A DNA stretch of 64,000 bases from Diadema antillarum (Eukaryota). Within the stretch, counting starts at the first letter, position 1. Each line of letters starts with the position of its first letter. The position numbers and the translations under genes were made by a program. Location of the stretch: the NCBI RefSeq assembly GCF_040938485.1, contig NW_027271112.1:1-64000 (forward strand), read 5' to 3'. This document shows, piece by piece, positions 28,324 through 56,109 of this stretch. The notes beneath the pieces were generated by a model. The model ran no database searches and was not told the origin of the DNA. It worked only from the letters and a program-made list of their open reading frames with translations.

Positions 28324-30623
28324 AAATGTACGATGTAAGATTTGGTGTGCATGTTCGAACTGTGTTCCTCTTTTTGTGAACACACAAGAACTGATATAAT
28401 AATGAACTTGAATTACACATATTCTTGAATCTTGATTCCATCTCCATTTGCCATTAGATATGTATTGATTTATGGAGCTCTTCCACAATTGTTATCCTTC
28501 CCATTGTCATTACTCATCTCTGAATAATTCAAATTTGATATTCTATTGAGGACCTATGTTTCTTCGATTACATAATGTACCTCTTCAATATATTGCTGCA
28601 AAAGGCATAATAAAACATGACCATTATTATATATTTAAAATGAAGCTTGAAATTCTGATAGTGTCGATATTCATGTATTTTTAGGAGTTTATCAGTTTCG
28701 AAGAGTGCATGCAGGATGAGTTTATGTTTTTATATGATCAGGTGCAGCTATCATAGAATCTGTTGAGCAGGAAAGAGAAAGATGGAAAATGAGGAATTAT
28801 GAGTGAATTCGCATGCGAGCCAAATGACAATAATGACACTGATAAAAATTGTGACAAAGTAAATGTCACAAATATGTGGAATAATAAGAAATAAAGAAAT
28901 TAATATATTATTTCAGAGAAAGAAATAACAGAGTGCATGCATGAGTATGAAAGATGAGTAAATACGAGTAATTATTATTGACTGGCACGTCTTTTTCCCA
29001 AGATTTAGCGGTATCCTTCATCTTAGAACAAACATTCATAATTATTATGAAAGAAGTGAACTGAATTTGAATTAAAAATAATGTGAAAAAATGAAAAAGT
29101 AAGTTAATTAAGTAAAAAAAAACAGTAAAAAGTAAAAAATATGAAACACAGTATACCGAATACATGTATTACCAAATGATAGATGTCCAAATGCAAAAGT
29201 GTTAAATAATAATATATCCACAAAAAAAAGGGGGGGGCAAAGAAATCTTTGGAACGATCAACCACAGCTATAATAACAATACATGCGTGTACTAAATGAA
29301 GATGAAAACAATGACAACACTCTTTTTAGAACAATTAAGAGAAACTGGCTTGTATTATCATCTTGATTATCACTAAATGTATTGTAATTATCACAACAAT
29401 CATTACATGACAATTAATTTCAATTAATAAGGTTATTGTTGATAAGCAGGTATAGCCCTAATAGTATTTGTATATAAACACATACGAAAATGAAATAGCG
29501 ACGGTTCGTAAATACACGCGTATTGCACGTTACCTATTGTACAGGCCCTACAGCGCGGGTCTCACGAACCGGCGTAATACAACTTACGTCGGTTCGTGAG
29601 ACCCGCGCTTAAGTACATAACCTATGGTGCGCGCAAGAAACGATGGATTTACGAACCGACGCAGTGAGTTTGAAGACAGAAATATCGTAAATTTTTTGAA
29701 TTCACACTAAAATTACACTATGGATAGGAAGAACAACTTCCACTCTCATCACCCTGTCAAAATTTTCACACACAAGACAGGAAAAGTCATTGAAAACGTT
29801 GTCTAAAACTTGTGAGATCTTTAAACGCGATTTTCTCAGAACTGCATTTTCGCTCAAAAACGAAATAGCGTCGGTTCGTGAAAACGCCGACGATATTTGT
29901 ATCCGAGTGCAAACGTTGGGTTATACACTGTTTAACGTAATCTCTCTCTCTCTCTCTTGCTATATGAAAAGTGTCAACCATCTTCCCCAACACTTTACTA
30001 TTTTGAACTTTGTCTTTATGTGTGATCACTGACAAGGTCATTTTTTATTACTGTATTTCTCTGCAATATACGTATTTTCTTATTGCTCTCCCCTCTCTCC
30101 ATCTCTCATGCACTCTCGTTTCTGTGACATTTAAACCGGCGGCTACATTGATACGACCCGACATCGTGCTGACTTATTGTTCTTGACTGTGTATGTCAGC
30201 ATAGCTCGAGTTGCACATGAAACCACACAACAGCCGAGACAAAGACATTCCCACAAGTTATCACTAAGCGCGCTCGTCACTTGATACATATTCACTCTTC
30301 ATGCGGAATGTACATTCAGTTTGGCAAGTCTTCACATTAAGAATGTGTGAACATCCACTGCTGCTGTCATAAATTGAGCTCACTTTTCACTTGTTCATCG
30401 TCTGAATCTACACCGGGACTACTGTTGATCGGGATGTCATATCTTTGCCCTGAAGGTGAAATTCCCTACCCAAGTCTGATTATCACAAGTTTCCGGTTGT
30501 GTATATATCATTCCTGTTCAAGTTGTTGGATATAACATAATGATGAGCGGTTGGTGAAAGTTTGAAACTACACTTTGTATGAGCATCGGATAAACGTGTA
30601 TGTTATGTAGAATGTGATCTCTA

Positions 30624-30690
30624 GCCGCGGTCACACTGGCAAACGATCTCGACGTTCAAGATCTCGATCTTTTACCAGTGTGACCGCGGC
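30624..30690. mobile_element. Minimal 67-bp hairpin MITE (PIF/Harbinger-like termini)
   Basis: TA|GCCGCGGTCACACTGGCAAA ... TTTACCAGTGTGACCGCGGC|TA. Confidence 0.7.
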
Positions 30691-30788
30691 TAATGCAAAC
30701 ATAAAAAGGGACTTCAAGGTACATTCAGAGCCTTCTAGTACATAAGACAAGGACGCCCTCATGTGGAGAGTACCCTCAAGCCCACTAA

Positions 30789-30878
30789 TGCTGAACCAAA
30801 GAGATTTTCCCCAGTGAGAAATCTCTTTGTGCTGAACACAGGTCACTGATCTCTACTCTCGAGACCAGTGACACAGGT
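30789..30878. mobile_element. Two adjacent CA..TG palindromic inserts with 8-bp TSDs (putative P-superfamily excision footprints)
   Basis: TGCTGAAC|33 bp|TGCTGAAC and ACACAGGT|27 bp|ACACAGGT. Confidence 0.65.
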
Positions 30879-30914
30879 GCACAATATTAACGCGCGTGCG
30901 CGCGCGCCCACACA

Positions 30915-30945
<31 letters not shown>

Positions 30946-31943
30946 CACACACACAGGCACACGCACGCACGCACAGAGAACCGAACTAGCTTATGAAAGC
31001 CACTCGTTGCAAGAAGTATTTTGTAAAAGCTACAAAAACTTTTTAATTCAGCTCCTATGCACTCTAACACCCTGATAACAACTAAAACATGATTGCAAAG
31101 CAAAGAATAATGTCTCATCAATCTCAATTTTTTTCCCTTGCAAGAAAGGAAATTCCATTACAAAAAAAAATTGTCTAAACTTCAATAATTTAGACTTTTT
31201 CTACGTGACCAGCAATTTCTTGTCTCTCCTCGCAACAGAGAATAAAATGTATTACTGGTATCAGATATATATACTGCACACTGAAAATGTACAGGAACTT
31301 ATCAACAACATATACTGTGACTTACAACTTTTCACATTTTTGAAACCTTGCTCTTTCAGAGAACAAAGCCATCATTATTGGCACATCAAGACGAATTGGG
31401 GAATATTTCATCTGGGAACCCATTTCCCTTAGATAGAAATCACCAGCCAACATCCATGCAGCTGTGAAACTGATAACTTGCTCTCTGACTGAGCTTAAAT
31501 CTCGGTATGATGATCACAGAGAAGTACAAGCATCACACTATAAAATTCCTTGTGCACTGTTGTCACTACAGGATATATATTCTGACAATTAGATGCATTG
31601 GAACAGATACAAAAGTTGCTAAAAGAGATGCACATGAAAAAATACCATGTGAAACCAAGCATGTTCTAATGATGATGTAAGAAGACCAGTATGGATTTCC
31701 ATCCTCAACCCGCAAAGAGGTACCAGAAAAATTACCTCACTGCCCTAAACCAACATCTACCCACAATGACACACTATGATAAACACTACCCACATTCTCT
31801 ATGAGTCATACACAACTTACCAGTTGTTGTTAACCCTGAATGTACCAAGACACTTGGCTGTAACTTGATTTTTCATCAACATTCAGATATTTTCTCCACA
31901 CTTACACCTAACTGTAAGTTAGCCAGCCCAACAGCCATAACTA

Positions 31944-32104
31944 CAGTAAACCTTGCTTAAGTCAACCTTGCATAAGTCAAATAATCGCATAAGTTGAAGG
32001 TCTTTTCAAGTCCTCTTCTCTTTATATTCTATTGATTTTAATCCCACATAAGTCAAATTTTCCCTAAGTCAAAGCTATTTCTTCAGTCAAAATAGATTCG
32101 ACTG
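31944..32104. mobile_element. Tc1/mariner (pogo/Tigger-like) MITE
   Basis: TA|CAGTAAACCT ... AGATTCGACTG|TA with repeated TAAGTCAA subterminal motifs. Confidence 0.65.
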
Positions 32105-33844
32105 TATGTACCTCTGTCCAGCAGGAGGGCCATGGTGACACAAGAGGGATTAAGGGGATTACATAATCTCTATTCATTGGCAAATCAAGTTTCTGGACAT
32201 CTGTGCCAGTGGGGAAAGAAATTGCTCCTGCTGATGTGCCAACTGGCGAACAAAGCACATGTAGGGATCAAAAGTGTCAGTCAGTTCAATTTTATGCTTG
32301 CTGATGTATACACAAAATCATACAGACTGATGTCTGCTTAATAATATACTTTGTATCAAAGCTAAACATCACATTATGGTGTATCTGTGTTATATCTGAA
32401 ATGACCCATCTCCCAGGGTACAATTTAGTATTACCTATGGTATATCAGACTTTATTTTGTGCAGTAGGCACAGATTAAGGTTTATTCTGCACATTCAAAG
32501 GAAATTGCATCCAATGTCAGACAGTGTGCACCGAATTAGTCCATTACTATTCACTACCTTGTGAAGTTCAACAGAAAACATACCACTTCAAATATCCCTT
32601 GCTTGCATTTCACAGGTAGTACTGAGACCGTAGTTTGTATATTTGCTTTTTACACAAATATGTTTCATATACGTTCGATTACAAATTAGAAAATTGTAAT
32701 AAACATGTATGATATAGGCGTGGAAAAATGCTAACTTTACTCAATATTGGGATTGTGAAAGCACATTTACGAGTTGTATTGGGAAAAATCATATCACAAG
32801 AATACAGTATAGTCAGTTAACACTTCAGAGAAATAATAAGCCATACTTCACAAAGCTTATACTGGCACCGATGTTATATTTGCTTTGCAACTTTATATAA
32901 ATCTATGTACATAGAATTTATACATACATGTATGCTGTGGGTAAGAGATGTGGAATTCGTACACAGGTTAATCAATTCCTTCTGAATTCAACACTGATGT
33001 GAAATAATATATATTCCTACACTTTGCATCTTATTACATCCCACCCATTGATATACATCACAACATGTACCTGTTAGACATGCCTACACTTTGTGCACTT
33101 TCAATGACATTTGATTTGATTTGATTTGATTTATTTGTTCTAACATAGTTGTTATATCATAGTCATAGTGCACGTGGACAAAATCTGAAAGAAGAAAATG
33201 CTTGAAACCAAGTACCATTTTTGATCTCCCCCAATGGGCCAAAATGTTGTCATTTTGTAGCATCTCCATATACAAAAATCAAAAGTGTCACTGTGTATAT
33301 TCAAACCATATAAGACATGCAAAAAAATACAATTGCTTTTCAATGAGTATTCTCTTACATTTTGCATAATTGCTTTTCTGCATTTGTAGGGTAAAAGTCA
33401 AATGAGAGCAAATCTTTGAATTTCATAATACTTTTCACATTGTTATCCGCGGTGTTGATGAAGAAAATATAGCAGTGTGCATGTTTGCACAGAAAGGAAG
33501 AATTGTTAATTATGTTGCCAGCAACAAACCCTAGAGCTTCTTAAGTCACTGGGTATGGTATGTACATGACTACAGGTACATGACTACCAGAGTGAGTACC
33601 ACAGTGTCCAAAAGAATGCATTGTGAATGGAAAAAAAAAAAGAGTGCTTTCATCATGGAAAGAATAAATGTTGTCAGCAACACTATACTAGAGTAGATAT
33701 GGCATACAGGAATACCACATTATTGCAATACCGGTATTTGTGCGTTGTATGTGGAAAAGAAAAACTGTCGAAAAGCATTAATTACTACTGAATAAGAGGA
33801 GCTGGAAATGCTCTGCTCAAGTGATTTGATTTGCGCTTTGAATA

Positions 33845-56029: not shown

Positions 56030-56109
56030 GTTCACCCCACAGAACTCTTACGTTCTCTTACGTTCTGTGGTTCACCCCACAGAACTCTTAAGAGTTCTGT
56101 AGTTCACCC
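56030..56109. mobile_element. Double palindromic footprint with 8-bp target present three times
   Basis: GTTCACCC|32 bp|GTTCACCC|24 bp|GTTCACCC; both inserts begin CACAGAACTCTTA. Confidence 0.65.

What the first reader, a model, noticed from the sequence alone, without database searches (positions are those of the whole stretch)
30789..30878. Two abutting CA..TG mini-palindromes each bounded by an exact 8-bp direct repeat (P-element-type footprints)
Seen: TGCTGAAC|CAAAGAGATTT-TCCCCAGTGAG-AAATCTCTTTG|TGCTGAAC (33-bp insert, perfect 11-bp arms). Overlapping its right repeat is ACACAGGT|CACTGATCTC-TACTCTC-GAGACCAGTG|ACACAGGT (27-bp insert, 9/10 arms). Established: P-superfamily elements end CA..TG and make 7-8-bp TSDs. 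Drosophila P transposase cuts with a 17-nt stagger, so donor sites often retain about 15-17 nt of each TIR. Inference: two different P-like (THAP9-related) families visited and left this spot, ~100 bp from a 67-bp Harbinger-like mini-hairpin, which suggests a local insertion hotspot.
Basis: partly seen in the sequence, partly recalled or inferred. Interest (0 to 1): 0.7.

Follow-up and report, generated by a model that had tools for sequence, protein, structure and literature searches.

The report
Two transposon excision scars, side by side
The two tiny palindromes are most likely scars left where two different cut-and-paste jumping genes landed 6 bases apart and later cut themselves out; one family's end lies beside a P-element-type transposase gene, so the scars record how such enzymes cut DNA in a sea-urchin-like genome.

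Summary
Both inserts have perfect 8-bp target duplications, and the window holds 4 such structures against 0 in 20 shuffles.

Scar 1 (33 bp) is made of the two ends of a ~330-bp non-coding transposon family, F1. With exact 12-nt arms the genome holds 181 short forms, 13 intermediate forms and 64 full-length copies. The other haplotype (contig C30) has the empty site with a single copy of the 8-mer, so scar 1 is polymorphic.

Scar 2 (27 bp) is in both haplotypes and belongs to family F2. Its 16-nt terminus occurs 68 times. Two occurrences lie about 2.1-2.2 kb from the HTH-domain match (about 690 bp past the stop codon on C27) of the two best P-type transposase genes in the genome.

F2 scars that keep both 16-nt ends are only 32-33 bp long. 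This fits the 17-nt staggered cut of the Drosophila P element. F1 scars keep up to about 25 nt per end, and no transposase was linked to F1.

The neighbouring 67-bp hairpin is a TA-flanked mini-transposon, not Harbinger-like.

The same scan had already noted 7-bp-duplication scars of this kind elsewhere in this genome. This is a new member of a known kind.

The parts
30789..30796 (.). Left copy of the 8-bp target duplication of scar 1 (TGCTGAAC)
   Evidence: The C30 haplotype has a single TGTTGAAC here.
30797..30829 (.). Scar 1: 33-bp remnant of family F1, with about 19-21 nt of the left end joined to about 12-16 nt of the right end
   Evidence: The parent ends were read from full-length copies. 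A 35-bp form with the same joint is at C101:476767. The scar is absent from the allele.
30830..30837 (.). Right copy of the duplication of scar 1. Its last 2 nt are shared with the left duplication of scar 2.
30836..30843 (.). Left copy of the 8-bp target duplication of scar 2 (ACACAGGT)
30844..30870 (.). Scar 2: 27-bp remnant of family F2 (P-transposase-linked terminus), with about 16-17 nt of one end and about 10-11 nt of the other
   Evidence: Same-shape copies with their own duplications are at L017 and L019. The scar is present in both haplotypes. The terminus lies next to a P-type transposase gene.
30871..30878 (.). Right copy of the duplication of scar 2
30622..30692 (.). Context: 67-bp palindromic mini-transposon flanked by TA. 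It is not part of the scars.
   Evidence: At least 76 BLAST matches in the genome. TA flanks in 8 copies.
56030..56109 (.). Context: two scars of a third family (end CACAGAACTCTT) that share one 8-bp target, present three times

Best explanation
Both inserts are excision scars. An F2 element inserted at ACACAGGT and duplicated it. F2 is a P-superfamily transposon whose 16-nt terminus lies about 690 bp past the stop codon of a P-type transposase gene. When F2 was cut out, the cut left roughly 17 nt of each end on the chromosome, and end joining sealed them into a small palindrome. This happened before the two haplotypes diverged.

Later a ~330-bp non-coding F1 element inserted 6 bp upstream at TGCTGAAC, on one haplotype only. 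It was reduced to 33 bp in the same way.

Shown:
- the target duplications;
- the parent family of scar 1;
- the empty allele;
- the many different joints;
- the adjacency of the F2 terminus to the transposase gene.

Inferred:
- that the reduction was transposase-driven excision with a staggered cut;
- that F1 is also moved by a P-type enzyme.
For: 1. Every copy examined has its own 8-bp duplication.
2. F1 lengths are bimodal. With exact 12-nt arms there are 181 sites of 24-54 bp, 13 of 55-85 bp (several are nested or adjacent scars) and 64 full-length copies. Controls gave 0.
3. Among the 50 listed sites there are dozens of different F1 joints, some with short filler or templated letters. The same joint types occur on both the CCCC and the CCGC end variants, so they arose repeatedly.
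4. The allele on C30 has the empty site for scar 1. Allelic status follows from flanks that are 99.65-100% identical, and from contig depths of 11.4-11.7 plus 12.6-14.4 that add up to the 25.4 seen where the haplotypes agree.
5. F2 termini at C27:2482794 and C1371:252762 point into the two best PF12017 matches, 2.1-2.2 kb away. That gene carries the HTH, RNase H and GTP-binding insertion domains of P transposases. I estimate the chance of such an adjacency at about 0.002.
6. All 8 F2 scars that keep both 16-mers are 32-33 bp long. This is what two 17-nt overhangs joined at a terminal TA would give. The 17-nt stagger and 8-bp duplication of P elements are described in PMC7776569 and PMC5386867.
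Against: - No transposase was found next to an F1 terminus, neither among the first 100 listed termini nor in the 3-kb P-transposase loci.
- F1 scars keep up to about 25 nt per end, and one keeps about 55 nt. A 17-nt cut alone cannot give this.
- The DNA between the F2 terminus and the gene on C27 could not be read, and no second terminus was found on that contig.
- C27 and C1371 may be two haplotypes of one insertion, so the link may rest on a single element.
- The F1 target pattern (T three bases before the duplication, A three bases after) also fits Tol2-type hAT elements.
- No locus with a full element on one allele and a scar on the other was found.
Confidence: 0.72

Rival explanations
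1. The short forms are themselves mobile ultra-small MITEs that inserted as 27-50-bp units and made their own 8-bp duplications.
For: Identical short forms occur at several loci with different duplications. Examples are the 44-bp F1 form at six or more independent sites and the 32-bp F2 palindrome at five sites. An allele pair of empty site and scar fits direct insertion equally well.
Against: The joints are very diverse. The commonest joints sit at the longest microhomology (AGTG), and the same joints recur on two end variants, which points to repeated birth. From my own knowledge, Drosophila P elements need internal binding sites well beyond the terminal 17-25 nt.
Confidence: 0.13
2. The short forms arise in place without transposase, by replication slippage or deletion across the stem formed by the inverted ends of a resident element.
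For: Many joints lie at 1-4-nt direct repeats inside the imperfect ~30-nt inverted ends of F1. F1 retention of up to 25 nt is closer to the length of the inverted repeat than to 17 nt.
Against: Joints with filler and templated insertions look like break repair. Retention stops short of the full inverted repeat. F2 scars stop at 16-17 nt. The same scar style is seen in several unrelated families with 8-bp duplications.
Confidence: 0.1
3. Family F1 (scar 1) belongs to hAT or another 8-bp-duplication superfamily rather than to P.
For: The F1 end CAAAG fits the hAT rule YARNG (my own knowledge). The target pattern of T at -3 and A at +3 resembles Tol2 (my own knowledge). GT....AC-type targets are shared by P, Hermes and hobo (PMC2577343). 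No P transposase was found next to F1.
Against: From my own knowledge, hAT excision makes hairpins on the flanks and leaves no transposon ends. F1 scars have the same style as those of the P-linked F2 family and share a GATYTYCCCC motif near the tip.
Confidence: 0.2

Closest known systems
Drosophila P-element excision footprints (17-nt staggered cleavage, 8-bp target duplication)
   Same: An 8-bp duplication is kept on both sides. The insert is made only of the two transposon tips, with CA...TG ends. F2 scars of 32-33 bp equal two tips of 16-17 nt. A transposase with the P-specific GTP-binding insertion domain lies next to the F2 terminus.
   Different: These are natural scars, fixed or segregating, in a deuterostome genome, not laboratory excision products. 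Family F1 keeps up to about 25 nt per end. Cleavage itself was not observed.
Zebrafish Pdre2 / THAP9-type P transposons
   Same: Deuterostome P-superfamily elements with short inverted ends that start CA, and 8-bp duplications (PMC10983969).
   Different: The end sequences are unrelated. No scars of this kind are described for Pdre in the papers I read.
Microhomology-mediated miniaturisation of transposons into MITEs (Ozma/Gnome in Aedes, PMC3814204)
   Same: Internal deletion between short direct repeats leaves both ends and the duplication.
   Different: In Aedes, single deletion products then amplify as families of hundreds of bp. Here there are hundreds of independent joints, and the products are 24-54 bp.
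7-bp-duplication scars noted earlier by this scan in the same genome
   Same: Same scar architecture, and stacking at one target.
   Different: Here the duplication is 8 bp, the families are different, one terminus is tied to a transposase gene, and one family exceeds the limit of 18 nt per end reported in those notes.

Membership tests
P-superfamily excision footprint | Target duplication of 7-8 bp kept on both sides of the remnant | tested here: met
   Both scars have perfect 8-bp repeats, and so do other copies.
P-superfamily excision footprint | The remnant consists of the two termini of an element that exists in longer form | tested here: met
   F1: ~330-bp parent, 64 or more copies. F2: paired termini 2.36 kb apart on C4 and C1885, and single termini elsewhere.
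P-superfamily excision footprint | The family is mobilised by a P/THAP9-type transposase | tested here: inconclusive
   F2: the terminus lies 2.1-2.2 kb from the P-transposase HTH-domain match, about 690 bp past the stop codon on C27, and points inward. The intervening DNA was not read. F1: no link found.
P-superfamily excision footprint | At most about 17 nt of each end retained (Drosophila-type stagger) | tested here: inconclusive
   F2: met. Scars with both 16-mers are 32-33 bp, and scar 2 is 16-17 + 10-11 nt. F1: not met. Retention is 15-25 nt per end, and scar 1 is about 19-21 + 12-16 nt.
P-superfamily excision footprint | An unoccupied site with a single copy of the target exists | tested here: met
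   Scar 1: the C30 haplotype and a contig of run X2 lack exactly 41 bp. Scar 2: no empty site was seen.
hAT transposon remnant | 8-bp duplication with YARNG termini and hairpin-type footprints that contain no transposon ends | tested here: not met
   8-bp duplication: yes. YARNG fits F1 (CAAAG) but not F2 (CACTG). Both scars are made of transposon ends, unlike hAT footprints (the rule is from my own knowledge).
Mobile MITE | Copies of one sequence amplified by transposition | tested here: inconclusive
   Some identical short forms lie at several loci, but the joints are highly diverse and recur on two end variants.
PIF/Harbinger (for the 67-bp hairpin) | 3-bp TWA target duplication | tested here: not met
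   Only TA is shared by the flanks of 8 copies.

The most novel reading that the evidence does not exclude
The scars are a fossil read-out of where each family's transposase cuts. F2 shows that the 17-nt stagger of the Drosophila P element is conserved in a deuterostome P transposon. F1 records a different, longer stagger of about 25 nt, so cut depth would be a family-specific trait within (or next to) the P superfamily.
Probability: 0.25. Interest if true: 0.6.

Novelty: new member of a known kind. Interest (0 to 1): 0.45.

Why it matters
P-type staggered cleavage has been mapped directly only for the Drosophila enzyme. Natural scars that stop at 16-17 nt, tied to a P-type transposase gene, suggest the same chemistry in a distant animal. 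They also give a cheap, sequence-only way to infer the cut position of each family.

The scars show that short palindromes and small allelic length differences in this genome are often transposon traffic. Such elements also re-use the same or adjacent targets.

Tried and rejected
- **Long F1 candidates.** Four left ends had no partner within 1.5 kb (L029, L043, L044, L047). They had no right end within 10 kb and no transposase ORF, only PNMA-like and phosphatase-like hits. They are probably truncated ends.
- **Termini inside the P-transposase loci.** None of the four families' ends occurs in the 3-kb loci L054-L071.
- **Boundary of the C284 P family.** It has only 3 copies, so the boundary could not be found by BLAST.
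- **Target-site pattern as a discriminator.** GT....AC-type targets are shared by P, Hermes and hobo (PMC2577343), and T(-3)/A(+3) also fits Tol2. This does not decide between superfamilies.
- **Literature search for end-motif rules** (CANRG, YARNG). Nothing useful came back.
- **Reads.** The only joint at the scar is a 41-bp skip with a 5-nt overlap, which is the C30-type allele. No full-length F1 allele was seen, and contigs break at the neighbouring CA/CG repeats.
- **"Paralog" reading of C30.** I first took it for a paralog and rejected that after and the depths.
- **Fetching more genome DNA.** The ends of the C27, C4 and C1885 elements are therefore unread.
- **F1 MITE interior.** It shows no similarity to any P locus held.

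Full report
**Observation**

- TGCTGAAC at 30789-30796 and 30830-30837 flanks a 33-bp insert with perfect 11-nt inverted arms.
- ACACAGGT at 30836-30843 and 30871-30878 flanks a 27-bp insert with 9/10 arms.
- The two duplications overlap by 2 bp.

I scanned the window for an 8-bp direct repeat around a short insert with inverted tips. This gave 5 hits (4 distinct structures) against 0 in each of 20 dinucleotide shuffles. A 7-bp repeat gave 1 hit and a 9-bp repeat none. The other two structures lie at 56030-56109. There, one 8-bp target occurs three times around two remnants of a third family.

**Scar 1 and family F1**

- Within 3 mismatches, the 33-mer has four more copies in the genome (1.75 Gb, 2963 contigs). 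Each has its own 8-bp duplication.
- Its first 18 nt occur 729 times with at most 1 mismatch, against 2 for the reversed control.
- Thirty fetched loci show what the family is. It is a non-coding element of about 330 bp with 8-bp duplications and imperfect inverted ends of about 30 nt. There are also many short forms of 33-51 bp that consist only of the two tips.

Counts with exact 12-nt arms, with 0 in all controls:

| Total length | Sites |
|---|---|
| 24-54 bp | 181 |
| 55-85 bp | 13 (several are two scars side by side or nested) |
| Full length | 64 |

The short forms are therefore not a random deletion series.

Among the 50 listed sites there are dozens of different joints.
- The commonest, a 44-bp form, sits at a 4-nt microhomology.
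- Several joints carry filler or templated letters.
- The same joint types occur on both tip variants (CCCC and CCGC). This argues for repeated formation rather than spread of one mini-element.
- In the listed sites each side keeps 15 to about 25 nt. One site keeps about 55 nt.
- The window's scar matches a 35-bp form at C101:476767, less two A's in a run. It keeps about 19-21 nt of the left end and 12-16 nt of the right.

**The empty site**

Contig C30 (locus L002) matches the window on both sides of scar 1 but lacks exactly the 33 bp plus one copy of the 8-mer. It has a single TGTTGAAC.

I first took C30 for a paralog. It is better read as the other haplotype, for three reasons.
- Its flanks are 99.65% identical at window 16737-17024 and 100% identical at 31748-32338. 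Only a middle block is 88-90% identical.
- In run X1, window-type contigs have depth 11.4-11.7 and C30-type contigs 12.6-14.4. Where the two haplotypes agree, the depth is 25.4.
- A contig of a second sample (X2) also skips the 41 bp.

Scar 1 is therefore a segregating difference. Scar 2 is present in both haplotypes with small differences, so it is older. Comparing the two alleles gives an ancestral left arm that differs by one letter from the F2 consensus terminus.

**Scar 2 and family F2**

- The 27-mer has three more copies, each with its own 8-bp duplication.
- Inserts with the 10-nt arms and 0-30 nt between them occur at 150 sites, against 0 in the control. They fall into several subfamilies.
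- The 16-nt terminus, with two degenerate positions, occurs 68 times against 0.
- Eight scars keep both 16-mers, and all are 32 or 33 bp long. A 32-bp perfect palindrome is what two 17-nt overhangs would give if they paired at a terminal TA. This is inference, because I could not read the 17th base of a long copy.
- Paired termini 2.36 kb apart on C4 and C1885 show longer elements. These hold no match to the C-terminal 442 residues of the C27 transposase.

**Link to a transposase**

- The genome has 18 matches to the P-transposase HTH domain.
- It also has uninterrupted ORFs that carry all four P-type domains.
- The two best matches are on C27 and C1371. Each has an F2 terminus 2.1-2.2 kb away that points towards the gene.
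- The C27 gene carries the HTH, RNase H N- and C-terminal, and GTP-binding insertion domains. It has one in-frame stop. Its end lies about 690 bp from the terminus.
- With 68 termini and about 15 P-like places in 1.75 Gb, I estimate the chance of such an adjacency in the right orientation at about 0.002.
- The two contigs may be two haplotypes of one insertion, so this may be a single observation.

For F1 no such link was found.

**Mechanism**

P elements make 8-bp duplications. They are cut with a 17-nt stagger that leaves 17-nt 3' overhangs on the donor, and these are then joined (PMC7776569, PMC5386867). A zebrafish P transposon also has ends that start CA and 8-bp duplications (PMC10983969).

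F2 fits this model closely. F1 has the same scar style but keeps more per end. Either its cut is deeper, or some repair synthesis from a sister copy precedes joining. I could not decide between these.

The F1 target has T three bases before the duplication (16 of 21 sites) and A three bases after it (19 of 21). This 14-bp symmetric site has the same geometry as the Drosophila P target (PMC2577343) but different letters. It also resembles Tol2, so it does not settle the superfamily.

**Clustering**

The four scars of the window form two tight pairs. Elsewhere, F1 scars lie next to or inside older F1 scars, at C30:4094368, C126:2373599 and C311:603394. Here F1 landed 6 bp from the F2 end. Re-use of a spot is thus supported, but its cause is open (target motif, or attraction to resident ends).

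**The 67-bp hairpin**

The hairpin at 30622-30692 belongs to a family with at least 76 matches. It is flanked by TA, so it is Tc1/mariner-like, not Harbinger-like.

**Earlier notes of this scan**

I did not check these beyond what is stated. They call the genome a sea urchin (Diadema antillarum). They report scars of the same kind with 7-bp duplications and at most 18 nt per end. My F2 data agree with that limit, and my F1 data do not.

**Limits**

The ends of the C27, C4 and C1885 elements are unread.
- All 12 own-genome searches are used.
- Counts from pattern searches require exact arms, so they are lower bounds.

Noticed in passing
The C30 sequence joins window 17024 directly to 29893, so it is a polymorphic insertion.
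   Followed up: partly
window 29893-31347 vs L002: A haplotype block only 88-90% identical lies between flanks that are 99.65-100% identical. This is very high local allelic divergence.
   Followed up: partly
L002:1030-1513 (allele of window ~30655): In the C30 haplotype the TA-flanked hairpin mini-transposon is interrupted by an insertion of about 480 bp. The insertion is itself flanked by TA and has AAGG..CCTT-type inverted ends.
   Followed up: no
window 56030-56109: Third scar family (end CACAGAACTCTT). The same 8-bp target GTTCACCC is present three times around two scars, so the target was used twice.
   Followed up: partly
L014:175-218 and L015:175-218: Fourth scar family, found by chance in flanking DNA: a 28-bp insert starting CATAGAGAT, between two copies of AGCAGAAC.
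   Followed up: no
G000:C30:4094368-4094452; C126:2373599-2373683; C311:603394-603464: F1 scars that abut or are nested in older F1 scars. The duplication of the later insertion is made of letters of the earlier scar.
   Followed up: no
L054:1369-1371 (C27) and L055 (C1371): The P-type transposase gene next to the F2 terminus has a single in-frame stop inside the RNase H N-terminal domain. About 105-bp tandem repeats lie upstream of the gene (L054:2370-3020).
   Followed up: partly
L056 (C284:4300904-4304149), L058 (C849:239325-242564): Uninterrupted P-type transposase reading frames (984 and 787 aa by the search table) with all four TNP-like domains. Their element ends were not found.
   Followed up: partly
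window 30889-30979: Alternating CG and CA repeats directly follow scar 2. Read contigs break here, which limits allele calls at the scars.
   Followed up: no
F1 insertion sites (21 loci): Symmetric target pattern: T three bases before the 8-bp duplication (16 of 21 sites) and A three bases after it (19 of 21).
   Followed up: partly
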